Below are positions 1 to 37,473 of a DNA stretch of 37,473 bases, one piece after another. The position numbers and the translations under genes were made by a program. Below the pieces are notes generated by a model that saw nothing but the letters and a program-made list of their open reading frames with translations, did not search any database and was not told where the DNA came from. The stretch lies in the NCBI RefSeq assembly GCF_018977255.1, contig NW_024704746.1, positions 27,306,528-27,344,000 of the forward strand, given 5' to 3'. Origin of the DNA: Callorhinchus milii. Taxonomy: Eukaryota. Numbering within the stretch: the stretch's first letter is position 1; every line of letters begins with the position of its first letter.

Positions 1-8005
<8,005 letters not shown>

Positions 8006-9849: not shown

Positions 9850-10281
9850 TCACAGGCGCAATTTTTTCACGGAGTTCACTAAAACCAACACTCCACGGAA
9901 ACAACTCCTTTCCCTCCCGGAAGGGGTTAGGATGTTGCAGAGGTCGGGGAGAGCAAGGCTATGGAGGGTTTGGAAGGTGAGGACCAGGATCTTGAACTGT
10001 ATCCTCTGTGTGATGGGAAGCCAGGGAAGTCGGGTGAGGTTGGGGGTGATAGGGTCACGGAGCCTGATGCGGGAGAGGATGCGAGCTGCGGAGTTCTGGA
10101 GGCTGCAGAGTCCTGAGGTGAGGAGGTGCTGACGGGAGTCTATCAGGACTTGTTGATGTTCAACTGTAGAAAGTTCGCTCTCATCCAGGACTTGATGTCT
10201 GACAAGACATTCTGTCAGGACAGCAGTGGGTCCTGGAGTCGAGGGTGGAGACAGAGAGATAGAGTTGTCATCTGCATACAT
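9850..10281 (-). mobile_element. Degraded L2 reverse-transcriptase fragment
   Basis: ORF starts MYADD and contains LQNSAARIL...LPWLPITQRIQFKILVLTFQ. Confidence 0.85.
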
Positions 10282-10610
10282 GTGGAGTCCTGTAGCTCAG
10301 TGGTTAGAGCACTCACTTTGCAAGTGAGAGACCTGAGTTCAATTCCAGGCAGAGGGCGAAACCTTGGGCAAGTTTCCTTACTCCACACAGAGCCTAATAA
10401 TAATCCCTCCAAAAACCAAACCAATAATAATAAATTGGTCATTTTCAATCCACGACTGTTTGTGGGACATTGCTGTGCGCAATTGGCTGCCACGTTCGCC
10501 CACAAATATACAGTCAATTCACTTTATAATGTGTTCTGTGAAGCGCTTTGGGACGTCCTCCCGACGTGAAAAGCGCTATATCAAATGCAAGGATTATTAT
10601 TAATATTATT
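10282..10610 (+). mobile_element. Full-length young tRNA-derived SINE
   Basis: GTGGAGTCCTGTAGCTCAGTGGTTAGAGC...GAGTTCAATTCC (A and B boxes); nearly identical to 22174-22497 and 35580-35903; (ATT)n tail. Confidence 0.93.
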
Positions 10611-14644: not shown

Positions 14645-15996
14645 ATCTGTGACCAGGGCTCCCTCTGCCTCCTCGTCCTCCTCGACCTATCGGCAGCATT
14701 CGATACGGTCGACCACGCTATCCTACTCCACCGCTTGTCCTCCCACCTCAACCTTCAAGGCACTGTCCTTGAGTGGTTTAGGTCGTACCTTTCTCACCGT
14801 CTTCACTTTGTCTCGACAAATGGCTTCTCCTCCACCCCCCGTACTGTCTCATGTGGTGTCCCTCAGGGCTCTGTCCTCGGTCCCCTCCTCTTCACCCTCT
14901 ATATGCTCCCCCTGTGGTGACATCATCCGCAGACATGGAGTTAACTTCCACATGTATGCGGATGACACCCAACTCTACCTTTCCTCCTTTACTCTCAACT
15001 CCACGACCACCGATGTCCTGACAGCTGCCTGTCCGACATCGAGTCCTGGACGAGAGACAACTTTCTTCAGCTCAACGTGCGCAAACTGAGGCCCTCCTGA
15101 TTGGCTCACGTCAGCGCCTCCGCACCTCAGGCGCTGACACCATCAGCATCCAAGGCTGCACTCTCCACCTCTCAAAGCCAGTCAGGAACCTCGGCGTTTT
15201 GTTCGACCCTGAGCTGTCCTTTCTCCCTCACATCCGCACCACAACTGGCACCGCCTTCCATCACCTCCGGAACATCGCCAGACTACGGCACTACCTCACC
15301 CCTCACGCGGCTGAAACCCTGGTCCACGCCTTTGTCACCTCAAGGCTGGACTATGGGAACTCTCTCCTCGCCGGCCTTCCCGCCACCTCCCTCCACAAGC
15401 TGCAGGTCATTCAGAACTCTGCAGCTCGTGTACTGTCCCGCACCAGACACCGCGACCACATCACTCCCACCCTCACCCTCGCCCTCGCTCGCCTCCACTG
15501 GCTCCCCATCCCCCAGAGGATTGATTTCAAGATCCTCATCCTCACCTACAAGGCCATTCACGGCCTCACTCCCTCCTACCTCTCCAACCTACTATCCCCC
15601 TCCCTATCCGCCCGTAACCTCCGTTCCTCTGGCTCCGGTCTGCTCCACGTCCCCCGCCCCAACCGCCCTACTATCGGTGGTCGGGCCTTCAGCCTCTCAG
15701 CCCCGAGGCTCTGGAACTCTATCCCCAGTGCCTTCGCCGCTTCCTCCCTCTCCTCCTTCAAGGCCGGTCTCAAAACCTTTCTCTTTGACCGAGCCTTCAG
15801 CTCCCCTCTCGACTCTCTTCCCCCTCCTCGCTCCCACCCTTCCCTCCCCTCACCCTGACCATTTCCCCCCTCCTTGCTCCCTCCCTTCCCCTGACCATTT
15901 CCCCCCAATGCTCGGGTCATGACCCAACTGTGCAGCGCCTTGGGACGTCCTCCTGACGTGAAAGGCGCTTTATAAATGGAATCTTGTTGTTGTTGT
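14645..15996 (+). mobile_element. 5'-truncated L2-clade LINE (RT domain to 3' tail), frameshifted
   Basis: Motifs [63 protein letters not shown] and LHWLPIPQRIDFKIL spread over shifted frames; ends in (TTG)n. Confidence 0.95.
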
Positions 15997-17203: not shown

Positions 17204-17781
17204 TTAATTCTCATATTCAATACATTTCATTAGTTGACTTGAATTCATTTTCTCCTCAATCTGCGCATCAAATATTTTAGTTTGCTTTGTGCTGAAATGG
17301 TTCTTCCAATCACCAACGGTGCCTGAAGGTGATAAATGTATCAGTTAGATGGTAACGTGTCATAGCCTCATAGAATCATGGAAATTTGCTGCACAGAAAG
17401 AGACCATTTGGCCCATCAAGTCTGTACCAGCTCTCAGAGCAAGATGTTCATTCAATCCTACTGCTTTATCCTATCCTTCCGCGCCTCTATCTTTCATATA
17501 ACTGTGAACTTCCCTCTATAACCCACAATGGATTCTACCTCTACCACCTGACTTGGCAGGGCACTCCACGTCCCAACAGCTCTCGGAATGAAAATAAATT
17601 TGCCTAAACCCTCTTCTTGTGACTATCTTATAATTATTAATCCAAATTATCCGTAATTATCCATTCAAATTTTCACGACTGAGGTGGGTAGATGTTCGTT
17701 AGGTCAGGGTATCGAAGGATATGGGGCAAAGGCCGGTATTTGGAATTGAGGTACAGATCAGCCATGATAATAATAATAATG

Positions 17782-17827
<46 letters not shown>

Positions 17828-20800
17828 TAATAATAATAATAATCCTTGCATTTGATATAGTGCTTTTCACATCTTCTGGACGTCTCAAAGGGCTTCACAG
17901 AATAGACTGTAAAGTGAATTGACTGTATATTTGTGGGCGAAACGCAGCGGCCAATTGCACACAGCAATGTCCCACAAACAGTTGTTTATTATGATCTAAT
18001 AGAATGCCGGAAAGTACAGGCTTGAGGGGCTGAATTGCCTACTCCGGGTCCTATGTTCCTAATTATGGTTCTGAGTCACTGTTCCTTACCAACCAGTGGA
18101 AATAACGTCTCACTATTGACCATGTCAAAACCCCTCACAATTTTGTTCACATCCAACAGGTCTCCCCGCAATCTTCTCAGCTACAATGAAAACAAACCCA
18201 ATTTCTTCAATCTCTTCTCGTAGCTAAAGTCCCTCATCCCTGGAATCATTCTTCTGGCTCCTCTGTACCCACTCCCAGGCTTTGACATCTTTCTGAGGTG
18301 CCCAAAACTGAATACAATATTCCAGCTGTGGCCTAAATAATGATTTGTAAAACTTGGCATGACTATTTTCCTTTTGTACTCTGTGTCCCATATATACAAG
18401 AAACTGCCCTTCAATATTCGCTAATTTTATCGATAGAGAAACTCAATGTGTACATGAGGGAATAGCGGGATATTAGGAGGGAGATAGGGAGAGGAGTTTA
18501 GGAGGGTGGAATTACAAGAGTATAAACTAATTGAGCCAAATGAACTATCTCAGTTCTCCTTGCGTTATACTAGTTAAGTGATTCATTACTCAAGGAATAC
18601 TTTGGTTGGCACAGGATGTTGGCACACTTTAAAGTGACACTCAACCTGATTAATGTACAAAACAACACAAAAATACATTTGTAAAGGGTCTGTCATGTTG
18701 GAGGAAGTCCTAAATCATTGAACAGTCAGAGATTAGGGATTAATATGTAACATATTAACAACTCAAAATAAATCCTGTCCACCCACACCTAATTAATAGT
18801 GGAACATGCTCCACAACTTACTATTGTGTCCCTACTATTGCAGTGTTGCTTAACAAAGTTCTTCCTAAGGTTGTTTTGCAATCGGAAGTGGAAAAAGAAT
18901 TGACATTCATTTATTATACTAATACAGTCAACATGTGTCACCAGCTATATTTGTGGAAGAAAAAGAATTGACATTCATTTATTATACTAATACAGTCAAC
19001 ATGTGTCACCAGCTATATTTGTGGAAGAAAAAGAATTGACATTCATTTATTATACTAATACAGTCAACATGTGTCACCAGCTATATTTGTGGAACAGACA
19101 TACCTTTTCGAAATATCAATTGTTTGTTGGATGTCAGAGCACAAACAGTGTTATTTGGATTGATGTTTTCTTTCTGTGCCTGTTCCTTCATCTCACTGAA
19201 GGAAGATTTCATAGCAATTTCATGTATTTTTTCAGGAGTCAGGTTTACACCCAGAAAGTTGCTGAGCTGCTCAATGCTCCTGGTCGCATCCTACAAAATA
19301 TTCACAAGGACAACAGTCTCTTTATTAAAACAGTTTTCACCATGAAAGCGAAAGGACCTGGTCTGTAAAGCCATTTCATTTGATTATTTAAAATTCTTAA
19401 ATTCCATCTTAATTTGGAAGCCAGTTCCCTTGACGAACTCTGGAAAATATTTTTTCCCCCCACAATCCACACAATCTTAAATTTTAAGACAAAGTATTCC
19501 TGCGGGCTATTGCCAGGGGCAATTTAGGGCATCAGCATTAAAATTTGAATGGATAAGCGAGAGGGCTCTGGGGTTAGCCTGCAAGACTATTTTTGTCTCA
19601 AAATTTAAGATTGTGCAGGTTGGGGGGGGGGGGGGGGGGGGCGGGGAAATGTTTTTCTACAGTTCTTAAAGAGAATCGTAGAAAAGATTAGGGATTAGGA
19701 TGGAATTTAAGAATTTTCCGCCATTCCGTAGAATTTTAAATATTCAGTTGAAATGGCTTTACACACATCAAGACCGTGTGAAATTTCCGGTGTGCACAGC
19801 AGTGTCCCACAAACCGTTGCTTGTTGTGTTGCACTGTTACAGAGCTAGCAAAAGAACGTTCAGAAACAACCAACCTTCTTCATGGCTTCGTAGTACAGGA
19901 TGAGAACATTGTCGTCATTTTTGTGGTCTTCCCAGCTGTGAATGTGATCAAACCACGAGCCACAAACAACTGCAATAGAAAAGAATGGTTGTTCAGTCAT
20001 CTGTAAATGAGATTTCCGGCCTTTGTAATATTTCTAGTTTTGTTTTTTCCTTTTCCTTTCATTTTCAGCAAATATACAGTTATCACATTACGTACCATAT
20101 ATTTTTCCCCTTTATGTTTTGGTAGCACATTGAGACTATAATGCAATGAGGTGGATTATTTCGAAGTGTAAAAACTATCTGTTTCAGCTGTCATGAGTAT
20201 ATTTTTCTTAAGCGAACTGTACTGAAAATTTGACCAAATAACTGTGTCTAAATTGAAGTTGTAAATCTCACCTTCTCCTCTCAGGAACATTTCCAAAAAG
20301 GTGGTCCATTTGTCAATGGTTGGCAGGTTGGGATTATCTTTGTAGTAGTGATACAAGGAAACAGCGGTGTCTTTAGGGTTTCTGATGATGTAGATCATCT
20401 GTGAATAGAGAGAACACAACATGTTTATAATACATTATAAAAGATCAACATACTCGATTACACATTTCCCTGATTTTCCTTAGGAAGAACAATCACCATC
20501 AAATTAGGCAAGAGTCATTGATTTTATATGAGCTATGAAGCTATACAGTTTAGAGTACAATAGGTGACAAATTGCAATAAAAACGAATTAACGTTTAATG
20601 CTTTTAGAATGATTTACTGAATATTGTTCGGAAACAAAACACAGAGGTTATTTTGAAAACACAGAGGCTATTTTGAAAAAGAAAGAAAAATTTGAGCAAT
20701 TTATTTATAAAATAAATCTAATAATCTGAAGCTTCCCGTGAATTTCTCCTTGTACCTTGCATTTCTTGGTTTTGAGCTGCACTGGCAACATCTTGTAGTT

Positions 20801-21583
20801 CAGGTGTGTGGGGATCAGTCTCGGGGAAGGAAGATTTCTCAGGTCCTCGTATTTGGAAGGATCTCCAAACTCAATGGGAGAGGTCAGTGTCACTGTTCCA
20901 CAGCCATTTGCACCTTGTTGAGTGCGGTACAGGTTTTTCAGGATCTCTGCCAACCAGTGAGTCCCTGTGAGGGTTGAAGAGAGAAAGACGATGAGAGTGA
21001 GACATGATCAAGCTGCATTTCCCACCACAAATCAGCGGCCAAACTGGTGATGAGTTAGGCATATAGTGATGTGTTAAAATCAACGACAATTACAAGTGGA
21101 ATAAAACTTGAATAAGATTCGATGACTTATTTGTGAAATAAATCAAACCTTTCCATAATCACGACTGGGTAAACATCTGGAATAGTAGGAAGAGGAGAAT
21201 CATGACAACAATACATATCACCAGTTGGAATTATGAAGGAGTGTTAAGGGAGAGAGGGATTAAGGGATATGGGGATAAGGCGGGCAGACAGAATTAGGTC
21301 AGAAGATCAGCCATCATCTTATTGAATAGCGGGGCAGACTCGAGGGGCTGAATTCCCTACTCCTGCTCCTAATTCCTATGTTCCTATGTTTATTGAACAC
21401 TGTCACATAGTGAAATGTTGCTTTTTCTTCTAAAACCTTCTTACCTGACTTTGGGTAGGACACCAACAGCACATCATCCTCTCTGGCTTCAAAGGAGTCC
21501 AACGTGTGTAAAAGCTCTTTTGATGAGCGTGTAGAAAAGGGAATCCCGTTAAACGTGTGGACGAGGGCTGACTGGGATGGCAT
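17204..21583 (-). CDS. SULT6B2: Cytosolic sulfotransferase, SULT6B2-like, copy A; exons 21445-21583, 20756-20964, 20272-20398, 19875-19969, 19104-19290, 17204-17322
   Basis: GT-AG exons of 139/209/127/95/187/119 nt give 291 aa + TAA. Motifs: 5'-PSB SYPKSGTHW, catalytic His in IPTHL, 3'-PB RNPKDTAVSLYHY, GSWFDH, FRKGTVGDWKNHF. Sulfotransferase call is firm; the symbol rests on recalled synteny (SULT6B2P/Sult6b2 next to CMAS) and such genes are often labelled SULT6B1-like. Confidence 0.9.
17766..17983 (-). mobile_element. SINE 3' half with expanded (ATA)n tail, nested in a CR1 3' UTR
   Basis: ~26 ATA/ATG triplets (17766-17843) followed by the reverse SINE body; CR1 3' UTR sequence on both sides. 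Confidence 0.85.
18065..18400 (-). mobile_element. CR1-clade LINE ORF2 fragment
   Basis: ORF 18181-18414: RRMIPGMRDFSYEKRLKKLGLFSL. Confidence 0.8.
18888..19094. repeat. Three-copy 68-bp tandem repeat
   Basis: Unit GTGGAA(GAA)AAAGAATTGACATTCATTTATTATACTAATACAGTCAACATGTGTCACCAGCTATATTT starting at 18888, 18953 and 19021. Confidence 0.95.
19390..19717. mobile_element. Palindromic MITE-like element
   Basis: Terminal 24-mers AAAATTCTTAAATTCCATCTTAAT / ATTAGGATGGAATTTAAGAATTTT pair with one mismatch; inner 24-mers CACAATCTTAAATTTTAAGACAAA / TTTGTCTCAAAATTTAAGATTGTG also pair. Confidence 0.7.
21245..21391 (+). mobile_element. CR1-clade 3' UTR fragment in intron 1 of SULT copy A
   Basis: Similar to 9587-9727; ends CCTATGTTCCTATGTT. 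Confidence 0.75.
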
Positions 21584-21662
21584 GTTGCAGACAGGTGGAC
21601 TCTGAAATCTCAGACTGTGTGTATTAATGAATGAAGAAACTAATACTGGCAGTGCAGAGCAT

Positions 21663-21670: not shown

Positions 21671-22173
21671 CACTGTATCTTGATGCAATTATTTTACTTA
21701 GGCAACTTCCAGCAGGAAATGACTTCATGTTATTTAATCTCCAATAAGCACCTAGCCTAGTGTTGGGTTGGAATTTTGCGACACATCTTATAATTATTAA
21801 CCTTTAGAGTTAACTGTACGAATGGAGCACAAAGTAATTCATTGTCAACATGAAGCTCTGCTGATTATTCCATGTGCCGCGTCAAATGCCTTTTGTTTTG
21901 ATTTATTTGTCATGGTAATTCAATGCTCAACGTAAAACTAGTTTGAGAAAAAAATCACTCAGATCAATTCAATGAGGTTGAAATTGATATTTGTAAGCTG
22001 GGTGGTGCTATGCTATTAGTGACTTCTATTGTGTAAATTAAATTGATGGATTAGGTAAAGATTGGGGGAAGGGAGTGGGGGGAATGTGATACAGAATATC
22101 AGCACACCAAAATTTTAACATAGGATCATAAGATTTGTTATGATGAAGCAGATAATTTGACTAATTTGACTTT

Positions 22174-22497
22174 GTGGAGTCCTGTAGCTCAGTGGTTAGA
22201 GCACTCACTTTGCAAGTGAGAGACCCGAGTTCAATTCCAGGCAGAGGGCGAAACCTTGGGCAAGTTTCCTTACTCCACACAGAGCCTAATAATAATCCCT
22301 CCAAAACCCAAAACAATAATAAATTGGTCATTTTCAATCTACCACTGTTTGTGGGACATTGCTGTGCGCAATTGGCTGCCGCGTTCGCCCACAAATATAC
22401 AGTCAATTCACTTTATAATGTGTTCTGTGAAGCGCTTTGGGACGTCCTCCCGACGTGAAAAGCGCTATATCAAATTCAAGGATTATTATTAATATTA
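22174..22497 (+). mobile_element. Full-length young tRNA-derived SINE
   Basis: Nearly identical to 10282-10610. Confidence 0.93.
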
Positions 22498-22734
22498 TAA
22501 TCTGATCTCAACCTTCCAGGACACTCACCTTATAAATCTTGCCTTCAATGTATCAAGTTTTCTTTTGATGGGTTATAGTGTAATATGTTATCTTGAAGGA
22601 CTTGGCTCGGGAGAAACTTATTACAACAGCTCATTGAATTTTCTGTAATTGAGAAATTACTGATACAAAGAGTTCCTCTTTAAGGAAGTATTTAACACAA
22701 ATCAATGGTTCCAAAGATAGATAATGTCTGCTTG

Positions 22735-26196: not shown

Positions 26197-26604
26197 AAAT
26201 AATCCATCTTTATACCATTGTGTGAGTGGGAGTTGCAAAGCCCATAATACACACACAATCATTAGGCCATGAATGGAGATGAAAGTTATCAGAACAAGTC
26301 AACAGATAAGTTTCTTTTTTTTAATTATTTTTAATAATAATAATAATAAACAAATGTAATGACAAACGAATGTTCACAGAGATCATTTCAAAATAAAAGC
26401 AAATAATTACCTGCTGACCAAAAAATATGTGCTAAAATATCTTGTTATAAATAAAAGCTATTTACACATTTATCAATATAATAATATAAGAGAAAGATTT
26501 CTATACATGATTATAAATATAGCCATTACAATATTTTCTCCCTAACTCTGTTGATTTAGTGTCAAGAGATTTTCTTCTTCCGACTTCACTGATGTCCCTC
26601 GATG

Positions 26605-29085
26605 TTAACTCTCATATTCAATAGACTTTGCCAGTTCACTGGAATTCATTCTCTCTCCAAATCGCTCGTCGAACAGTTTATTCTGTCTTGTGCTGAAATG
26701 GTTCTTCCAGTCTCCAACAGTACCTAAAGAGAAGAGGCGCATGGATTAGACTGGGAAATATATGTAATTAACACAAACAAGAGTTTAGAGACACATAATG
26801 TGATTGTAACTGCTCTGGGTGATGCTAAACTATGTTCAGTGGTTTCCCTTTAAGTGCTGTTATTACTCACAGTGGAAATTGCCCACAAAATGCACAGTCA
26901 CTACACTTTACAGTATATTCTGTGAAGTGCTTTGAGTCGGAGAATTCCTTCCTCTGACTTTAATTTGCAATTGAATCCCAATCTAAATTAACATGTAAAG
27001 TAGGGCCACAGGTGGTGAAAAGGACAAATAGCAACTGAAGGCTGTTCAGGGTTGGAACACACACTGATTACTAACAGTATTCGTGCCGTCCGCATGTTAC
27101 CTAACGGACCTCTCTGAGCCCTTTGCTGCCGCCACAACATATAGTGATGTCAGTATTATTGTAAATCAAAAGCTAACGACACCTATTGACATCAATTCAG
27201 AGACAAACCTTTTCGGAATATCAGCCTCTTGTTGGATGTCAGAGCGCACACAGTGTTATTGGCATCGACCTTTTCCTTCTGCGCCTGTTCCTTCATCTCA
27301 TTAAAGGACGATTTCCTGGTGATGTCGTCAATTTGCTCAGAAGTCAGGTTGACACCCAGGAAGGTGCTGATCTGCTCAACGCACTCGGTCGGATCCTGAT
27401 AAAATATTCAGAGAAGAAAAATTCATTAGTATGTGTGAAAGCAACAATGTTCTACAAAATACAGTCACTACACTTTCCAGTAGATCTCATGAAGTAATTT
27501 GAGACATTTCAATGATGTGATAAGCTGCTGAATCAACTTATTATTCATACATAATAATACTTTCACCCACAAATATACAGTCAATTCATGTTGCAGTATA
27601 TTCTGTGAAGCACTTTGAGATGTCGAGACATTCAAAGCGCTATATAAAATGTGAGGATTATTATAAGTTTTCAGTATCTTTCAGAGGGAAACAACTGTTT
27701 ATGAACAATGAATTTAACCATTGAAATGAGGAAACTCAATGGATATAAATGTCATTTGTAGCTCTCTCTCTGCTCATATTTCAATTCAATCTAAGCATTA
27801 AGCGCTCTGGAATGCCACCCTGCGTGAGGGCACTAAATAAATGCAAGTTGTTGCAGCGTGTAATGTGGTTCCATCCGTTATTCTTATCTCCAAGAGAAAC
27901 ACAGAGCAGTTTGTTACAGATCTGGTGGGTAACTTGGTGCAGTATCTCACCTTCTTCATGGTTTCGTAGTACAGAATGAGAACATTGTCATCATTTTTGT
28001 GCTCCTCCCAACTGACAATGTGATCGCACCACGAGCCACAAACAACTGCAATAGAAAAGAATAATTGTTGAGCAATTTGTAGATCTAGAAATCTAGATTT
28101 TATTTCCAGGAAATTTTTATTTATTCACAAATTGAGAGAATGGGTCAGAATTTTAACATTAAATTTAGTGACAATAACTACTACTACTAATAATGATAGT
28201 AACAATAACTACTAATACTACTAATAATAATATTAGCAATCACTAACTGTGACATAATCTCACCTTCTCCTCTAAGGAACATTTCCAAAAAGGTGGTCCA
28301 TTTGTCAACGGTTGGCAGGTTGGGATTATCTTTGTAGTAGTGATACAAGGAAACAGCAGTGTCTTTAGGGTTTCTGATGATGTAGATCATCTGTGAGAAG
28401 AGAGAACACAACATGTTCAGCAAAGATCATACAAACAGCATTAAATATCAGTGCTCAAAGAGCACAATATTAATCAAAGTATTGTTTATGAGTATTGATT
28501 ATGAGTATTTTGATAAATTTTAAGTCTTTATGAAACATTAACATTGTAATATGTTGCATGAAAACCATTTCTCTAATGTAAGGATTATTGTGATATTTAT
28601 CAAGTGTCTGTACCTTGCATTTCTTGGTTTTGAGCTGCACTGGCAACATCTTGTAGTTCAGGTGTGTGGGGATCAGTCTCGGGGAAGGAAGATTTCTCAG
28701 GTCCTCGTATTTGGAAGGATCTCCAAACTCAATGGGAGAGGTCAGTGTCACTGTTCCACAGCCATTTGCACCTTGTTGAGTGCGGTACAGGTTTTTCAGG
28801 ATCTCTGCCAACCAGTGAGTCCCTGTGAGGGTTGAAGAGAGAAAGACAATGAGAGTGAGATATTGTCAAACTATTATCAATAGAAACACACCATCTTCCC
28901 TATCTCTGGAGATTTGATTTTATATTTAATGTGTAAAACTTCTTACCTGACTTTGGGTAGGACACCAACAGCACATCATCCTCTCTGGCTTCAAAGGAGT
29001 CCAAGGTGTGTAAAAGCTCTTTTGATGAGCGTGTAGAAAAGGGAATCCCGTTAAAGGTGTGGACGAGGGCTGACTGGGATGGCAT
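26605..29085 (-). CDS. SULT6B2: Cytosolic sulfotransferase, SULT6B2-like, copy B; exons 28947-29085, 28614-28822, 28264-28390, 27951-28045, 27209-27395, 26605-26723
   Basis: Same six exon sizes as copy A, all GT-AG, open frame of 291 aa ending KSIEYES*. PAPS-binding motifs intact. Confidence 0.9.
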
Positions 29086-29167
29086 GTTGCAGTCGGATTC
29101 TCTCTCAGATCTGAGGCTGTGGAAACGAGAAGAGACTCTGAATGATGAGAGGCTGGAGATCCTCCTG

Positions 29168-29175
29168 TATATATA
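29168..29175 (-). promoter_or_regulatory. TATA box of SULT copy B
   Basis: TATATATA 83-90 nt upstream of the ATG; CCAATCAG at 29361-29368 further upstream. Confidence 0.6.
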
Positions 29176-29235
29176 CATCCTCTCTGTCCTGTCGTAGTTA
29201 CACCATTGACGCAACCTTCAGTACCGGAAAATGAT

Positions 29236-31058
29236 TTCACAATTGACCAACGCAAATAAGATTGTCGTCACGGAATACTACAACAACATTCTCATTATTG
29301 TTTTTCCTCAGCCCAAGATTTACTTTTCTGATATTTTAAGAAATTTCCCAATTTAACAATCCAATCAGGAACTCGTGTCAATTATCATTAATAATAAACA
29401 TTGCATTTGATATAGAGTCGCATCACATCTTTGAGACATTTCACGGAATATACTGAGAGTATATATTTTTTGTGGGCGAAACACTTTACGTTTTGCACAG
29501 CACAGGAATCAAACCCAGGTCCTCTCGCTTGCAAGGCGAGTCCTCAAGCAATTGCTACAGGATCCCACATCTTAATCATTCCCAATAGGTGACAAAGTGT
29601 TGTTTGAGGGGTTCTTACACAGAATTGTTTACTGATACTGTGAGAATTCACAAAGCGTGAGAACAGTAGCTGTGTCTGTTTTGCAATACTTTCCGTTGCT
29701 TTTTATTATGTAGAAATAGTGACTTGTTATTGGAAATAGATCAGACTTTGGGACAGGGAAGTAAAGTCTGTCTGTCTGGCTTTGGGGCTATTTGGAGGAG
29801 AAGTTCCTCCCAAACATTTGTAAAGTTATTGACTGAATTAGGAGTTTAATACAGCAATCCACGGCTTAACAAAATTCTGTAGGACATTTTACCAGCCTTA
29901 AAACATGTATATTATTAGGATAAAATCCTTCATTGGGTCCTATTAACAGGTTATCTGTAGATTAGCATCACTTTACCCTATGAATTCTTTTGTTTTAAAT
30001 GGGTTTAAGACCAGCATTAATTACAGCTGTCACTTTGTTAGACAGGCTGCTATAGAAAGGTCCTAAAGACCGTGTTGGTCAACAGTTGCCTCCTTCAAGG
30101 CCCGTCTCAAGACCCTCCTGTTCGACCGCACCATCGGTCACCCTCCTACCCCCACCCTCCTTGCCCTCCACCCACCCCCAATGCCAACTCGCAGCACTGG
30201 GTCCAAATCCCTGACTGTCCAGCGCCTTGGGACGTCCTTTATATGTGAAAGATGCTATACAAGTGCAATGTGTTGTGGTACTATAATATTCTTCGCTATT
30301 TCCAATTCCCTTCATCTTCAATTCAATTCCCTTAAATAATATTTGTCCTGGAAATGCTTCTGTTATTGGTCTCCTCCATGTCCAGCAATAACTCTTTGGG
30401 CCCAATGAGGCTTGTGTAGAGGAAGATCTGATCAGAGCTGATCATCAGCACCCAGAACTGTGTAGTGACTAAGGGCAGTGAATTGATGGTGATAACAGAA
30501 ATAGTGAAGAATATTATATCACAACAACACATTACTTCCCTATTCCAAAGTCTGATCTATTTCCAATAACAAGTCACTATTTCTACATAATAAAAACCAA
30601 TGGAAAGTATTGCAAAACAGACACAGCTACTGTTCTCACGCTTTGTGAATTCTCAGAGTATCAGTAAACAATTCTGTGTAAGAACCCCTCAAACAACACT
30701 TTGTCACATATTGGGAATGATTAAGATGTGGGATCCTGTAGCAATTGCTTGAGGACTCGCCTTGCAAGCGAGAGGACCTGGGTTTGATTCCTGTGCAGTG
30801 CAAAACGTAAAGTGTTTCGCCCACAAAAATATATACTCTCAGTATATTCCGTGAAATGTCTCAAAGATGTGATGCGACTCTATATCAAATGCAATGTTTA
30901 TTATTAATGATAATTGACACGAGTTCCTGATTGGATTGTTAAATAGGGAAGTTTCTTAAAATATCAGGAAAGTAAATCTTGGGCTGAGGAAAAACAATAA
31001 TGAGAATGTTGTTGTAGTATTCCGTGACGACAATCTTATTTGCGTTGTCAATTGTGAA
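29236..31058. repeat. Large inverted repeat upstream of copy B: arms 29236-29764 and 30532-31058, spacer 29765-30531
   Basis: Arms align as reverse complements over ~528 bp with only scattered differences. Each arm contains a decayed SINE (~29388-29568 and its mirror). Confidence 0.95.
30080..30280 (+). mobile_element. L2-like 3' fragment inside the palindrome spacer
   Basis: CCTCCTTCAAGGCCCGTCTCAAGACCCTCCTGTTCGACCG...CAGCGCCTTGGGACGTCC matches the 3' end of 14645-15996. Confidence 0.8.
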
Positions 31059-31871
31059 GTACTTTCGAACAGGAAACTAAATGTACACACGTTTAACACA
31101 CTACAGAAATGTAAATTTGTATTGTACCTTCCAAGCACCACGTTCTTGGGTTTTACTTTAAGTTATATTTATCTTAATTTTAAACATGTCAATCGTCTCT
31201 TCCCCGGAGAGGAAAGCTCCACCCTGTCCGGTCTCTCTCGGTGGCTGTGTGATGACAGGGAATTGTTTCCTCTCTAAAGCATGTCTTGTTCTTGTGACAC
31301 ATTCTTGTGAAATCCAGTATCTGTTTATCGTACATGAGTAACGTCCACATACAGTCACATAACAAAATATTGGCTGTGACCCAAGAAAGACAGAAAACCA
31401 TCTAATGAGACGATGTGACATGAATTCTTACATGAAAGTTGACTTTTTTCTTACATGGTGTTGACTGTCAATTCAGTCAATATCTAATTTGCAAAGTAAA
31501 GAGACTTTGGGACTGTGAACCCATACAGTCTGAGGCTCCAATGTAATGCTAGGAATCTGCTGCATTGGTGGAGGGGCCGTCCTTCATAGAACCAAAGAAT
31601 TATAGAATTATACAGCACAGAAGGAGGCCATTCGGCCCATCGTGTCGGTGCTGGGAAACAGCACTAAGTAAATGGAACAAATAACCAGATTTCTGAAATA
31701 GTGATTTTTAAAAAAAAATAAGCCCAAAGAATGGCTCCAATGTGCAGATATCAGGGAGAGAGGAGGATTAATTTCCACAGCAGTCTTCAGAAATGACTGG
31801 AAATAGTGTTTCATAACTGAATCAGTGTGATAGGTTGCAAATGCCACATTGGTTTAGAATTTTGAAACACG

Positions 31872-32568
31872 ACAACAACAACAACAACAACAACAAGATT
31901 CCACTTATAGAGCGCCTTTCACGTCAGGAGGACGTCCCAAGGCACTGCACAGTTGGGTCATGACCCGAGCATGGTCAGGGTGAGGGGAGGGAAGGGAGGG
32001 AGCGAGGAGGGGGAAGAGAGTCGAGAGGGGAGCTGAAGGCTGAAGGTCAAAGAGAAAGGCCTTGAGACCGGCCTTGAAGGAGGAGAGGGAGGAGGCAATG
32101 CGAAGGCACTGGGGATGGAGTTCCAGAGCCTCGGGGCTGAGAGGCTGAAGGCCCGACCACCGATGGTAGGGCGGTTGGGGCGGGGGACGTGGAGCAGACC
32201 GGAGCCAGAGGAACGGAGGGTACGGGCAGGTAGGGAGGGGGAAAGTAGGTTGGAGAGGTAGGAGGGAGCGAGGCCGTGAATGGCCTTGTAGGTGAGTATG
32301 AGGATCTTGAATTCGATCCTCTGGGGGATGGGGAGCCAGTGGAGGCGAGCGAGGGTGAGGGTGAGGGTGGGGGTGATGTGGTCGCGGTGTCTGGTGCGGG
32401 ACAGTACACGAGCTGCAGAGTTCTGAATGACCTGCAGTGTGGAGGGAGGGCCGGGAAGGCCGCGAGGAGAGAGTTCCCATAGTCCAGCCTTGAGGTGACA
32501 AAGGCGTGGACCAGAGTTTCAGCCGCGTGAGGGGTGAGGTAGTGCCGTAGTCTGGCGATGTTCCGGAC
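31872..32568 (-). mobile_element. 5'-truncated L2-clade LINE, same family as 14645-15996
   Basis: Reverse complement closely matches ~15267-15996; (CAA)n tail at 31872-31896. Confidence 0.95.
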
Positions 32569-32603
32569 AGGAAAAAGTCAATCAATATTATTGGTTTCAC
32601 TTT

Positions 32604-32609
32604 TTTATT
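32604..32609 (-). terminator. Candidate polyadenylation signal of SULT copy C
   Basis: AATAAA on the minus strand ~325 nt past the stop codon. Confidence 0.45.
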
Positions 32610-32932
32610 GAAGTGCAATGAGAAGAAACAAACCACAAAGCTGTTCAATAATAAAAATAAATATTCAGATAAATTAACAACAATCCAAAATGTTCATTGA
32701 TCTAATCCTTGGGTTATGTGTGTAATAAGTTTTATATATAAAGAATACAATTCAACACATCATAAATATTACACGCAGCACTGAGTACACTAAGCTCATT
32801 GCCTCATGAACCTTGTGCTGCAGTTTAAGTAAAAAATTCCTGCAATAAATTATTACAAATACAAATATTGTTTGAATCCTAAATCTATTTCCGAAGCACG
32901 AGATTTTCTGCTTCAAAAAACATCCTTCAATG

Positions 32933-35366
32933 TTAACTCTCGTATTTAATAGACTTTGCCAGTTCACTGGAATTCATTCTCTCTCCAAACCGCTCATCAA
33001 ATAGCTTATTCTGTCTTGTGCTGAAATGGTTCTTCCAATCTCCAACAGTACCTAAAGGTTAGAAGGGCAAATAGATTAGTTTGGAACATGTCTAACAGTC
33101 GAATAAATAGTGAGGAACATGGCAGTCATTTATCAAATATATACATATATATGGTGTCCAACACACAACACAATGTTTAATAAGAAAATTAAATATGTCA
33201 ACCATCCCCCTACGTATATTCCGTTATGACTGGTTCTCAAAGGATCAGCAGCAGCAACGCTTAAAGTCAAAATAACTCGAGCAAGTTGTACTCTCCTCAA
33301 CCTGAGAGGAGCAGCAAATCTAACAGAGACTTCAGTCAACACCGAGACATTCTTAATCAGTAAAAGGGGAACTGAGGTTGAGGTACAGATCCGCCATAAT
33401 TTATAGAATAGTGGAACAGGCTCTTGGGGCTGAATGGCCTACTCCGGCTCTATAAGAATCGCCCCATTTTACCCAATTAGCTCTGAATTTACCTAAATCT
33501 GCTGTGACTGTAGCGAATTGTGATCATTACTACAATCTCACTATTTCAGCTCAATCCTGTCACCAAATAAACTCAGAGGAGACGAACCTTTTCGGAATAT
33601 CAGCCTCTTGTTGGATGTCAGAGCACACACAGTGTTATTGGCATCGACCTTTTCCTTCTGCGCCTGTTCCTTCATCTCATTAAAGGACGATTTCCTGGTG
33701 ATGTCGCCAATTTGCTCAGAAGTCAGGTTGACACCCAGGAAGGTGCTGATCTGCTCAACGCACTCGGTCGGATCCTGGAGAAACAATCACAAGAAGAAAA
33801 GCTTGTTATAAAAAGGGAGATAAAACTATCATTAATTTGAATATGAATATTTTCCTCATGGCCCAGTAACAGATACTGTTCAATGAGGATGAGAATCTCT
33901 TTTGCCAGTTTAGTAACTTACAAGAAATGTGTGTATATGAGGAATAGGATTTTCCTGCTTTAGGACAACGGCACATTGTGAATGATGGGACCAAAAGTGC
34001 TGTGGATTCGAGTGAAATCCTCCTGAATTGTTGGTCAAATCTTCCCCAATAAATATTTGCTGGTATTTGTAACCTGTTCCTCATATAGTGAATGAATTGG
34101 TGCCCTGTGGATTCTGATGACTAGATATATATGTAATTGCAGAGATATTACAGGGGTTCTTACTTGTTTAGACCCAATTTGGATGTAAGATGTGACATAG
34201 AATAAAGCAGAACCTTTGTGCACGACCTTACCTTTTTCATGTCCTCGTAATATAGAATGAGAACATTGTCATCATTTTTGTGCTCTTCCCAACTGACAAT
34301 GTGATCGCACCACGAGCCACAAACAACTGCAATAGAAAAGAATAATTGTTTAGCAATTTGTAGATCTAGAAATCTAGATTTTATTTCCAGGAAATTTTTA
34401 TTTATTCACAAATTGAGAGAATGGGTCAGAATTTTAACATTAAATTTAGTGACAATAACTACTACTACTAATAACGATAGTAACAATAACTACTACTACT
34501 ACTAATAATAATATTAGCAATCACTAACTGTGACATAATCTCACCTTCTCCTCTAAGGAACATTTCCAAAAAGGTGGTCCATTTGTCAACGGTTGGCAGG
34601 TTGGGATTATCTTTGTAGTAGTGATACAAGGAAACAGCAGTGTCTTTAGGGTTTCTGATGATGTAGATCATCTGTGAGAAGAGAGAACACAACATGTTCA
34701 GCAAAGATCATACAAACAGCACTAAATATCAGTGCTCAAAGAGCACAATATTAATCAAAGTATTGTTTATGAGTATTGATTATGAGTATTTTGATAAATT
34801 TTAAGTCTTTATGAAACATTAACATTGTAATATGTTGCATGAAAACCATTTCTCTAATGTAAGGATTATTGTGATATTTATCAAGTGTCTGTACCTTGCA
34901 TTTCTTGGTTTTGAGCTGCACTGGCAACATCTTGTAGTTCAGGTGTGTGGGGATCAGTCTCGGGGAAGGAAGATTTCTCAGGTCCTCGTATTTGGAAGGA
35001 TCTCCAAACTCAATGGGAGAGGTCAGTGTCACTGTTCCACAGCCATTTGCACCTTGTTGAGTGCGGTACAGGTTTTTCAGGATCTCTGCCAGCCAGTGAG
35101 TCCCTGTGAGGGTTGAAGAGAGAAAGACAATGAGAGTGAGATATTGTCAAACTATTATCAATAGAAACACACCATCTTCCCTATCTCTGGAGATTTGATT
35201 TTATATTTAATATGTAAAACTTCTTACCTGACTTTGGGTAGGACACCAACAGCACATCATCCTCTCTGGCTTCAAAGGAGTCCAAGGTGTGTAAAAGCTC
35301 TTTTGATGAGCGTGTAGAAAAGGGAATCCCGTTAAAGGTGTGGACGAGGGCTGACTGGGATGGCAT
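32933..35366 (-). CDS. SULT6B2: Cytosolic sulfotransferase, SULT6B2-like, copy C; exons 35228-35366, 34895-35103, 34545-34671, 34232-34326, 33588-33774, 32933-33051
   Basis: Same six exon sizes, all GT-AG, open frame of 291 aa ending KSIKYES*. Confidence 0.9.
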
Positions 35367-35448
35367 GTTGCAGTCGGATTCTCTCTCAGATCTGAGGCTG
35401 TGGAAACGAGAAGAGACTCTGAATGATGAGAGGCTGGAGATCCTCCTG

Positions 35449-35456
35449 TATATATA
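35449..35456 (-). promoter_or_regulatory. TATA box of SULT copy C
   Basis: Identical context to 29168-29175. Confidence 0.6.
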
Positions 35457-35579
35457 CATCCTCTCTGTCCTGTCGTAGTTACACCATTGACGCAACCTTC
35501 AGTACCGGAAAATGATTTCACAATTGACCAACGCAAATAAGATTGTCGTCACGGAATACTACAACAACATTCTCATTAT

Positions 35580-35903
35580 GTGGAGTCCTGTAGCTCAGTG
35601 GTTAGAGCACTCGCTTTGCAAGTGAGAGACCTGAGTTCAATTCCAGGCAGAGGGCCAAACCTTGGGCAAGTTTCCTTACTCCACACAGAGCCTAATAATA
35701 GTCCCTCCAAAACCAAAAACAATAATAAATCGGTGATTTTCAATCTACGACTGTTTGTGGACATTGCTGTGCGCAATTGGCTGCCGCGTTCGCCCACAAA
35801 TATACAGTCAATTCACTTTACAGTGTGTTCTGTGAAGCGCTTTGGGACGTCCTCCCGACGTGAAAAGCGCTATATCAAATGCAAGGATTATTATTATTAT
35901 TAT
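35580..35903 (+). mobile_element. Very recent full-length SINE insertion
   Basis: 324-bp insertion relative to the empty site CTCATTAT^TGTTTTTCC at 29298/29299. Confidence 0.95.
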
Positions 35904-36617
35904 TGTTTTTCCTCAGCCCAAGATTTACTTTTCTGATATTTTAAGAAATTTCCCAATTTAACAATCCAATCAGGAACTCGTGTCAATTATCATTAATAAT
36001 AAACATTGCATTTGATATAGAGTCGCATCACATTTTTGAGACATTTCACGGAATATACTGAGAGTATATATTTTTTGTGGGCGAAACACTTTACGTTTTG
36101 CACTGCACAGGAATCAAACCCAGGTCCTCTCGCTTGCAAGGCGAGTCCTCAAGCAATTGCTACAGGATCCCACATCTTAATCATTCCCAATATGTGACAA
36201 AGTGTTGTTTGAGGGGTTCTTCCACAGAATTGTTTACTGATACTCTGAGAATTCACAAAGCGTGAGAACAGTAGCTGTGTGTTGCAATACTTTCCGTTGC
36301 TTTTTATTATGTAGAAATAGTGACTTGTTATTGGAAATAGATCAGCCTTTGGAATAGGGAAGTAATGTGTTGTTGTGATATAATATTCTTCACTATTTCT
36401 GTTATCACCATCAATTCACTGCCCTTAGTCACTACACAGTTCTGTGTGCTGATGATCAGCTCTGATCAGATCTTCCTCTACACAAGCCTCATTGGGCCCA
36501 AAGAGTTATTGCTGGACATGGAGGAGACCAATAACAGAAGCATTTCCAGGACAAATATTATTTAAGGGAATTGAATTGAAGATGAAGGGGATTGGAAATA
36601 GCGAAGAATATTATAGT

Positions 36618-36818
36618 ACCACAACACATTGCACTTGTATAGCATCTTTCACATATAAAGGACGTCCCAAGGCGCTGGACAGTCAGGGATTTGGACCCAG
36701 TGCTGGGAGTTGGCATTGGGGGTGGGTGGAGGGCAAGGAGGGTGGGGGTAGGAGGGTGACCGAATGTGCGGTCGAACAGGAGGGTCTTGAGACGGGCCTT
36801 GAAGGAGGCAACTGTTGA
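36618..36818 (-). mobile_element. L2-like 3' fragment in the inverted spacer
   Basis: Mirror copy of 30080-30280. Confidence 0.8.
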
Positions 36819-37473
36819 CCAACACGGTCTTTAGGACCTTTCTATAGCAGCCTGTCTAACATAGTGACAGCTGTAATTAATGCTGGTCTTAAACCCATTT
36901 AAAACAATAGAATTCATAGGGTAAAGTGATGCTAATCTACAGCTAAACTGTTAATAGGACCCAATGAAGGATTTTATCCTAATAATATACATGTTTTAAG
37001 GCTGGTAAAATGTCCTACAGAATTTTGTTAAGCCGTGGATTGCTGTATTAAACTCCTAATTCAGTCAATAACTTTACAAATGTTTGGGAGGAACTTCTCC
37101 TCCAAATAGCCCCAAAGCCAGACAGACAGACTTTACTTCTCTGTCCCAAAGGCTGATCTATTTCCAATAACAAGTCACTATTTCTACATAATAAAAAGCA
37201 ACGGAAAGTATTGCAAAACAGACACAGCTACTGTTCTCACGCTTTGTGAATTCTCAGAGTATCAGTAAACAATTCTGTGGAAGAACCCCTCAAACAACAC
37301 TTTGTCACATATTGGGAATGATTAAGATGTGGGATCCTGTAGCAATTGCTTGAGGACTCGCCTTGCAAGCGAGAGGACCTGGGTTTGATTCCTGTGCTGT
37401 GCAAAACGTAAAGTGTTTCGCCCACNAAAAATATATACTCTCAGTATATTCCGTGAAATATCTCGAGAATATG

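What the first reader, a model, noticed from the sequence alone, without database searches (positions are those of the whole stretch)
29236..37473. Invertible ~770-bp segment between long inverted repeats at the promoters of two sulfotransferase paralogues, caught in both orientations
Seen: copies B and C each have ~530-bp inverted arms starting ~60 bp upstream of the TATA box. In B the left arm runs into AGTCTGTCTGTCTGGC (29765) and the spacer ends ...ATCACAACAACACA (30531). In C the left arm runs into TGTGTTGTTGTGAT (36366) and the spacer ends ...GCCAGACAGACAGACT (37132). The same spacer is therefore flipped. Arm variants switch phase: the C left arm matches the B left arm out to ~35955 but matches the B right arm at 36104 and at its inner end, which places a crossover between ~35955 and 36104. 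Established: recombination between inverted repeats inverts the enclosed DNA. Inference: this may be a recurrent flip-flop inversion in a vertebrate proximal promoter that could change what lies ~600-1400 bp upstream of the TSS. Whether it is a single old event, a polymorphism or a somatic switch cannot be told from one sequence, and no recombinase is encoded here.
Basis: partly seen in the sequence, partly recalled or inferred. Interest (0 to 1): 0.85.

Follow-up and report, generated by a model that had tools for sequence, protein, structure and literature searches.

The report
Small palindrome flipped between two gene copies
Two neighbouring elephant-shark sulfotransferase genes each carry a 1.8-kb mirror-image DNA unit just upstream of their start, and its middle part points opposite ways in the two copies, most likely from one ordinary recombination event and not from a gene switch.

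Summary
Copy B has arms at 29236-29767 and 30529-31058 (97.6% complementary) around a 761-bp spacer. Copy C has the same unit from 35517, and its spacer (36369-37129) is the reverse complement of B's. C's spacer differs from B's at 9 of 761 bases, about the same as the flank (18 of 1303), so it is a true paralogous copy.

- C's left arm is split by a young tRNA-SINE.
- C's right arm is cut by the window end.
- The arms are duplicated genomic DNA holding an old SINE fragment, not transposon ends.

The two places where C's arms differ from each other and B's arms also differ (36104 and the inner cluster) are swapped. Four outer sites keep the left type. This fits an exchange inside the arm, but the reciprocal arm is out of view.

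The best reading is a single inversion by homologous exchange between the arms after B and C separated. This is a known mechanism at small scale. Nothing supports a recurrent or regulated flip-flop.

Spacer orientation could not be checked independently.

The parts
29236..29767 (.). Unit B, left arm (promoter-proximal)
   Evidence: 97.56% complementary to 30529-31058 (13 differences in 532 columns).
29768..30528 (.). Unit B, spacer (761 bp), holding a degenerate SINE/LINE-tail-like piece at about 30089-30285
   Evidence: reverse complement of 36369-37129, with 9 of 761 differences; weak matches (70-85%) to repeats elsewhere in the window.
30529..31058 (.). Unit B, right arm
29379..29570 (-). 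Old tRNA-SINE fragment inside the arm (mirror copy at 30726-30916)
   Evidence: 75-93% matches to the window's SINE copies. This shows the arms are duplicated genomic DNA and not terminal repeats of a mobile element.
35517..35579 (.). Unit C, left arm, outer 63 bp before the SINE
   Evidence: continuous with the B/C flank alignment 27933-29298 = 34214-35579 (98.7%).
35580..35898 (+). Young tRNA-derived SINE inserted into C's left arm, with an (ATT)n tail. The end and the target duplication are blurred by the tail.
   Evidence: Rfam tRNA match at 35588-35650; 95-96% identical to 10280-10610 and 22173-22498; absent from the same point in B.
35899..36368 (.). Unit C, left arm, inner part. It has private changes at 36034 and a 4-bp deletion at about 36279-36281.
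35955..36104 (.). Interval where C's left arm changes from left-type to right-type letters (putative exchange point)
   Evidence: Inferred from one arm only.
36369..37129 (.). Unit C, spacer, flipped relative to B
   Evidence: (pair I1).
37130..37473 (.). Unit C, right arm. Only the inner 344 bp are present, because the window ends here. A single N lies at 37426.
28903..29085 (-). Gene B first coding exon (SULT6B1-like). The TATA-like stretch lies at 29168-29175.
35184..35366 (-). Gene C first coding exon. The TATA-like stretch lies at 35449-35456.

Best explanation
A small palindrome lies 61 bp upstream of the TATA-like stretch of an ancestral SULT6B1-like gene of the elephant shark. It is an inverted duplication of about 530 bp of ordinary upstream DNA around a 761-bp spacer.

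The palindrome was already present when the B and C copies arose, or when they were last homogenised. Afterwards, in one of the two copies, a single homologous exchange between the two arms turned over the spacer and the inner part of the arms. The exchange could have been an intrachromatid crossover or a replication template switch. It probably fell between 35955 and 36104 in C coordinates.

Occasional arm-to-arm gene conversion keeps the arms alike. The inversion is most likely neutral, for two reasons:
- It leaves the promoter-proximal arm almost unchanged.
- It only reverses DNA about 590-1350 bp upstream.

Shown: the structure, the flip, and the linkage of the inner arm variants to the spacer ends. 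Inferred: the order of events, the exchange point, neutrality, and that the assembly has the orientation right.
For: - Arms and flip.
- The palindrome is older than the B/C split. The arms differ by 2.4% within B (13 of 532). B and C differ by 1.2% in the spacer (9 of 761) and 1.4% in the flank (18 of 1303).
- C's spacer has its own 9 differences, so it is not B's sequence used twice.
- At the two places where C's arms differ from each other and B's arms also differ (36104 and the inner cluster), the letters are swapped relative to B. The four outer sites of C's left arm keep the left type.
- If all four outer sites were private to B's right arm, that arm would have 7 private changes, against 2-3 in each other arm. 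This makes an exchange inside the arm the simpler reading.
- Both C arms share letters that neither B arm has (36222/37280 and 36346/37152), which shows arm-to-arm conversion.
- The arms carry an old SINE fragment and have no target-site duplication.
- In 4 of 4 other individuals a contig bridges the arm/spacer junction at 36368/36369 (records 6, 12, 21, 28). The palindrome itself is therefore not peculiar to one assembly.
- Inversions between inverted repeats are common and often recurrent in humans (abstract of PMC3961182).
Against: - No spanning read or second assembly confirms the orientation at either copy. The runs available were Logan contigs of 91-484 bp laid. They break inside the arms and mix B and C letters.
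- The outer part of C's right arm is beyond the window, so the reciprocal product of the exchange is unseen.
- C's left arm is equally distant from B's left arm and B's right arm (13 differences each). Read site by site it is a mosaic (L L L L L / R R R / L L / R R R), which could also reflect several exchanges or conversions.
- The last 14 bases of the window differ from all other arms at 5 positions. This is unexplained.
Confidence: 0.6

Rival explanations
1. Recurrent or polymorphic germline flip-flop. The mechanism is the same (homologous exchange between the arms), but it keeps happening, so that one or both loci segregate in both orientations in elephant-shark populations.
For: - Arm-to-arm conversion has occurred since the B/C split (shared C-only letters).
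- The site pattern of C's left arm is mosaic.
- In run X18 the only contig covering 35949 carries the right-arm letter there, with no change listed at the left-type sites 35932 and 35955 (table 3). This hints at exchange between arms that is still segregating.
- Human inversions between inverted repeats are often recurrent (abstract of PMC3961182).
Against: - There are no orientation data from any individual.
- The arms are short, and their identical tracts are only 115-175 bp. From recalled knowledge of the minimal identical tract needed for efficient homologous recombination in mammals, this is near the lower limit and predicts a low rate.
- The single T>C in X18 could be an independent mutation.
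Confidence: 0.2
2. Assembly or phasing error. The two units really have the same orientation, and the assembler joined C's left arm to the wrong inner arm.
For: - The window ends inside C's right arm, with a single N at 37426 and 5 odd letters in the last 14 bases.
- A spacer between near-identical inverted arms is a classic ambiguity for assemblers.
- No independent check was possible.
Against: - A wrong join would have to fall in the 205 bp or less between the SINE tail (about 35899) and 36104. Inward of that, C's two arms are told apart by 36104, the 4-bp deletion and the inner cluster.
- C's spacer is a distinct copy with paralogue-level divergence.
- The window lies more than 27 Mb into a large piece. 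That suggests a chromosome-scale assembly, but its read technology was not established here.
Confidence: 0.13
3. A mobile element with long terminal inverted repeats that sits, or was re-inserted, in opposite orientation at the two genes.
For: The shape of arm-spacer-arm, 1.8 kb long. Another first-reader note reports a mobile palindrome elsewhere in this genome (unchecked).
Against: - There is no target-site duplication at 29236/31058.
- The arms contain an older SINE fragment.
- There is no other copy in the window.
- The outer part of C's left arm matches B's left arm, not B's right arm, so the whole unit was not turned.
- The unique spacer parts have contig depths at or below those of the flank in 4 of 4 runs (table 2). 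The tool warns that this depth is not a copy number.
- No transposase domain was found.
Confidence: 0.03
4. A programmed or somatic orientation switch that regulates the two sulfotransferase genes.
For: Only the position next to the promoters, and the existence of a regulated inversion between 250-bp repeats in a fungus (abstract of PMC3574095).
Against: - No recombinase was found.
- No directional CTCF-like motif lies in either unit (0 of the 13 window matches fall inside).
- No Rfam family other than the SINE's tRNA-like head was found.
- The flip does not change the proximal ~590 bp.
- No expression or tissue data were seen.
Confidence: 0.02

Closest known systems
[quoted passage not shown] 2014, PMC3961182; abstract read)
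   Same: A segment flanked by highly similar inverted repeats is found in both orientations. The mechanism is homologous exchange between the repeats. Variants are shared between orientations.
   Different: In the human set the repeats are 1.6-24 kb and the inversions 5.1-226 kb, and orientation was genotyped in people and apes. Here the arms are 0.53 kb and the spacer 0.76 kb. The two orientations are seen in two paralogous copies on one sequence, not in two individuals, and nothing was genotyped. A preprint abstract states that about 85% of human inversions under 2 kb arise by L1 twin priming (10.1101/2021.12.20.472354; listing only). A repeat-mediated inversion this small is therefore the less documented kind.
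Sex-chromosome and autosomal palindromes with arm-to-arm gene conversion and spacer inversion (titles and abstract starts only, in the listing: PMC13252187, 10.1101/2022.12.01.518724, PMC13688818; the rest recalled)
   Same: Two inverted arms around a unique spacer, arms kept alike by conversion, and a spacer that can invert.
   Different: Those arms are tens of kb to Mb long and usually carry genes. Here the arms are 530 bp of non-coding upstream DNA.
Sclerotinia sclerotiorum MAT inversion region (PMC3574095; abstract read)
   Same: Short inverted repeats (250 bp) flank a segment found in both orientations next to or within genes.
   Different: There, tetrads show 1:1 segregation in every meiosis, and expression differs between orientations. 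Here no recurrence or expression effect is shown.
Bacterial invertible promoters (invertons such as fimS or hin; recalled, not tested by any search)
   Same: DNA between inverted repeats near a gene start lies in either orientation.
   Different: Invertons use a site-specific recombinase and repeats of tens of bp, and the promoter sits inside the invertible segment. Here no recombinase was found, the arms are 530 bp, and the TATA-like promoter lies outside the unit.

Membership tests
Inversion by homologous exchange between inverted repeats (NAHR-type) | Two long, highly similar inverted repeats flank the segment | tested here: met
   532-bp arms, 97.56% in B. In C the visible part of the arms (348 alignment columns) is 95.4%.
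Inversion by homologous exchange between inverted repeats (NAHR-type) | The segment between the repeats exists in both orientations | tested here: met
   the B spacer equals the reverse complement of the C spacer (752 of 761 identical). This holds between paralogues in one assembly only.
Inversion by homologous exchange between inverted repeats (NAHR-type) | The breakpoints fall inside the repeats: arm variants change phase, and no sequence is gained or lost | tested here: inconclusive
   C's left arm is left-type at 4 outer sites and right-type at 36104 and the inner cluster. C's right arm is reciprocal at 36104 and the cluster, but its outer 190 bp are outside the window.
Inversion by homologous exchange between inverted repeats (NAHR-type) | Orientation confirmed by molecules that span arm, spacer and arm | not testable with these tools
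   only Logan contigs of 91-484 bp laid, and none spans an arm; the tool that could have fetched another assembly was closed.
Recurrent or polymorphic inversion | Both orientations at one locus among individuals, or shared variants that need several events | not testable with these tools
   cannot phase orientation. The mosaic is explained as well by private changes and conversion.
Programmed invertible switch (site-specific) | A recombinase encoded nearby and short specific recombination sites | tested here: not met
   10 of the 34 ORFs of 100 aa or more were scanned, and only a CMAS-type cytidylyltransferase domain was found; the two spacer ORFs match no family. The other 24 ORFs were not scanned.
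Programmed invertible switch (site-specific) | A promoter or other directional element inside the invertible segment | tested here: inconclusive
   The TATA-like stretch lies outside the unit. No CTCF-like motif lies inside it. No transcript data were seen.
DNA transposon or foldback element with long terminal inverted repeats | Target-site duplication, multiple dispersed copies, and ends that belong to the element | tested here: not met
   no duplication at the ends; no further copy in the window, and the arms contain an older SINE fragment. Genome-wide copy number was not testable.
Cytosolic sulfotransferase SULT6B1-like genes (context) | Sulfotransfer_1 domain and identity to an annotated protein | tested here: met
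   PF00685 in 3 of 4 exon peptides. P0031, named 'sulfotransferase 6B1-like [Callorhinchus milii]' by NCBI, matches copy A at 100% within the exon limits.

The most novel reading that the evidence does not exclude
The 761-bp spacer keeps flipping in the elephant-shark germ line. Individuals would then differ in orientation at B, at C or at both, and orientation would alter expression of the adjacent SULT6B1-like gene. A directional element in the spacer, such as its SINE-derived part, could cause this. The locus would then be a small recombinase-free orientation polymorphism at a vertebrate promoter, kept in two paralogues.
Probability: 0.05. Interest if true: 0.6.

Novelty: new member of a known kind. 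Interest (0 to 1): 0.25.

Why it matters
As it stands, this is a tidy small-scale example of three ordinary processes at one spot:
- formation of a palindrome;
- conversion between its arms;
- inversion of the spacer by exchange between the arms.

It sits next to the promoters of two tandem SULT6B1-like genes in a slowly evolving vertebrate. It is useful as an annotation warning, because the orientation of such spacers is easy to misassemble and cannot be seen with short reads. It would also serve as a test locus for how short inverted repeats can be and still mediate inversion.

It would matter more only if long reads showed both orientations at a single locus, or an orientation-dependent effect on expression.

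Tried and rejected
1. Independent assembly.

2. Reads. Only Logan contigs were on offer. As expected for 31-letter words, the contigs stop inside the arms. They are mosaics of B letters (36445, 36590, 36943, 36947) and C letters (36862, 36908). They cannot show orientation and gave no evidence for or against the flip. The many joints in table 5 link SINE or tRNA-like pieces and were disregarded.

3. Transposon reading. Rejected: no target duplication, an old SINE inside the arms, and an outer arm that was not swapped.

4. Haplotype-duplication artefact (B and C as two alleles). Rejected because B/C identity falls from 98.7% near the promoter to 95.5% and 92.6% towards the 3' exons, with unalignable stretches between.

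5. Directional CTCF-like motif. There are 13 matches in the window and none in either unit.

6. Rfam. There are 5 matches at gathering score, all tRNA-like SINE heads. The only one inside a unit is the SINE insertion in C.

7. Earlier notes of the scan searched by sequence and by several words gave nothing on the arms.

8. Literature. Searches for this locus found no paper on it: 'elephant shark' + 'inverted repeats' + 'inversion' gave 3 papers, 'SULT6B1' + 'tandem' + 'duplication' gave 5, and 'Callorhinchus milii' + 'sulfotransferase' gave 9. I judged these from titles and abstract starts only. The assembly's sequencing technology could not be established. Supplementary files were not opened.

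Full report
**What is there**

A self-comparison of the window and the repeat finder show two units with the same architecture.

| Part | Unit B | Unit C |
|---|---|---|
| Left arm | 29236-29767 | 35517-35579 and about 35899-36368 |
| Spacer | 29768-30528 (761 bp) | 36369-37129 |
| Right arm | 30529-31058 | 37130-37473 (the window ends inside it) |

- B's arms are 97.56% complementary, with 13 differences in 532 columns.
- C's left arm is split by a SINE of about 320 bp. The SINE has an Rfam tRNA match at 35588-35650. It is 95-96% identical to the copies at 10280-10610 and 22173-22498. It is absent from the same point in B.
- B 29433-31007 aligns with C 37464-35893 on the opposite strand at 98.0% over 1576 columns.
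- The B spacer equals the reverse complement of the C spacer except at 9 of 761 positions.

The flip is therefore real in this sequence and far beyond chance.

**Context**

The genes lie on the minus strand.

- Three of four exon peptides match Pfam Sulfotransfer_1.
- A protein that NCBI names 'sulfotransferase 6B1-like [Callorhinchus milii]' (P0031) matches copy A (17207-21583) at 100% within the exon limits. The window is therefore elephant shark.
- A first-reader note places another finding 27.3 Mb before this window on the same piece, so the window is part of a large scaffold or chromosome.
- A TATATATA stretch lies 61 bp outside each left arm, at 29168-29175 and 35449-35456. The start codons are at 29083-29085 and 35364-35366. 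No transcript data were seen, so the promoter assignment is inferred.
- Copy A has no such unit.

**What the unit is made of**

- Each arm holds a degenerate SINE fragment, 29379-29570 and its mirror image, which is 75-93% similar to the window's SINEs.
- The spacer holds another repeat-derived piece at about 30089-30285.
- The unit's ends have no target-site duplication.
- There is no further copy in the window.
- The two spacer ORFs match no Pfam family.

The arms are therefore an inverted duplication of ordinary upstream DNA. The unit is a small palindrome, not a transposon with terminal repeats.

**Order of events**

- The arms differ by 2.4% within B.
- B and C differ by 1.2% in the spacer (9 of 761) and 1.4% in the flank 27933-29235 against 34214-35516 (18 of 1303).
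- The palindrome is therefore older than the last common ancestor of the B and C promoter regions, and C's spacer is a true paralogue and not B's sequence used twice.
- B and C are not two alleles laid in tandem. Their identity falls to 95.5% and 92.6% towards the 3' exons, with unalignable stretches between.
- The SINE entered C's left arm after the split.

**Arm variants**

B's two arms differ at 13 positions.

- At the four outer positions (29247, 29327, 29344, 29350), C's left arm has B's left-arm letters.
- At 36104 and in the inner cluster (36353, 36355, 36366), C's left arm has B's right-arm letters, and C's right arm has B's left-arm letters.
- At 29588 and 29640 both C arms agree with B's right arm.
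- At 29695 and 29699 both C arms agree with B's left arm.
- At the T run (29466) both C arms have the left-arm length.
- Two letters are shared by both C arms and by neither B arm (36222/37280 and 36346/37152).

Only 36104 and the inner cluster tell C's arms apart, and both are swapped, as an inversion predicts. The sites shared by both C arms show private changes or arm-to-arm conversion.

If all four outer sites were private to B's right arm, that arm would carry 7 private changes, against 2-3 in each of the other arms. It is simpler to take them as old left/right differences. The caveat is that the outer 190 bp of C's right arm lie beyond the window, so the reciprocal product is not seen. 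Overall, C's left arm is equally far from both B arms, with 13 differences each.

**Independent data**

Of the 22 runs listed, all are kept as Logan contigs. Four runs from 2025 (X15-X18), from four samples of the same organism, hold 70-76% of the sampled words. Laid on 34900-37425, they give pieces of 91-484 bp.

- In 4 of 4 runs one contig bridges the arm/spacer junction at 36368/36369 (records 6, 12, 21, 28). The palindrome junction therefore exists in other animals.
- No listed contig crosses the other junction (37129/37130) with 31 letters on each side.
- No contig spans an arm.
- The contigs mix B letters (36445, 36590, 36943, 36947) with C letters (36862, 36908).
- They also carry letters found in neither copy (36318, 36319, 36367, 36376, 36919, 37022, 37027, 37034, 37165, 37196). 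These are polymorphisms or further copies.

An exchange inside identical sequence creates no new 31-letter word, so these data cannot show orientation. They neither support nor contradict the flip.

**Could it be an assembly error?**

A wrong join would have to lie in the 205 bp or less between the SINE tail and 36104. Inward of that, C's arms are told apart by 36104, the 4-bp deletion and the inner cluster. That is a short ambiguity, and I could not establish the read technology of the assembly. Three things keep the possibility open:
- the window ends inside C's right arm;
- a single N lies at 37426;
- the last 14 bases differ from every other arm at 5 positions, all transitions.

I put this reading at about 0.13.

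**Mechanism and function**

The pattern needs one homologous exchange between the arms in one copy, plus a few conversions. This is the known mechanism for inversions flanked by inverted repeats.

- In humans such inversions, with repeats of 1.6-24 kb, are common and often recurrent (abstract of PMC3961182).
- Inversions under 2 kb there are reported to arise mostly by another route (abstract in the listing).
- A fungal mating-type region between 250-bp repeats inverts at every meiosis (abstract of PMC3574095).

Nothing here indicates regulation:
- No recombinase or transposase domain was found. Ten of the 34 ORFs of 100 aa or more were scanned, plus the two spacer ORFs.
- No CTCF-like motif lies in either unit.
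- No RNA family other than the SINE head was found.
- The arm next to the promoter is nearly the same before and after a flip, so only DNA about 590-1350 bp upstream is reversed.
- The identical tracts between arms are only 115 bp (B) and 175 bp (C). From recalled knowledge of recombination requirements, this argues for rare rather than frequent exchange.

**Verdict**

The flip-flop or promoter-switch part is not. I file this as a new, small member of a known kind. The open questions, to be settled by spanning long reads, are whether the orientation is right in the assembly and whether it varies among animals.

Noticed in passing
window 37426 and 37460-37473: A single N sits in a T run of C's right arm. 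The last 14 bases differ from all three other arms at 5 positions, all transitions. This could be low-quality sequence next to a gap or a real diverged patch.
   Followed up: no
window 19096-21590 against 27201-29092 and 33580-35373: The first three coding exons of copy A are 96.9-99.6% identical to those of B and C, while the introns do not align at all. Another first-reader note (s1-906015) flags this as exon-limited concerted evolution.
   Followed up: partly
window 26595-29298 against 32923-35579: B/C identity rises from 92.6% at the last exon through 95.5% to 98.7% at the promoter and 98% in the palindrome. This suggests recent homogenisation of the 5' half and the upstream unit, not a uniform duplication age.
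   Followed up: partly
window 10280-10610, 22173-22498, 35578-35904: Three copies of a tRNA-derived SINE are 95-97% identical to one another and have Rfam tRNA heads. The family was recently active. One copy landed in C's left arm after the B/C split.
   Followed up: partly
window 15266-15996 and 31884-32567: An inverted pair of a G+C-rich (about 60%) element, 89-95% identical and 16 kb apart. Its long ORFs (273 and 247 aa) match no Pfam family. It is probably a repeat family.
   Followed up: partly
window 5-418 and 445-1135: The window opens with an exon encoding the start of a cytidylyltransferase domain (PF02348; CMAS-like). A G+C-rich tandem array with a period of about 21 bp follows it.
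   Followed up: no
window 35949, 35990, 36318-36376, 36919, 37022-37034, 37165, 37196: Contigs from four other animals carry letters found in neither B nor C (table 3). In X18 a right-arm letter at 35949 sits between left-arm letters at 35932 and 35955. These are segregating variants, a conversion tract, or further copies of the unit outside the window.
   Followed up: no
same genome, other pieces: First-reader notes list 46 'palindrome' findings in this genome, among them several non-coding or promoter palindromes of about 2 kb. If real, small palindromes are a general feature of this genome. These notes are unchecked.
   Followed up: no
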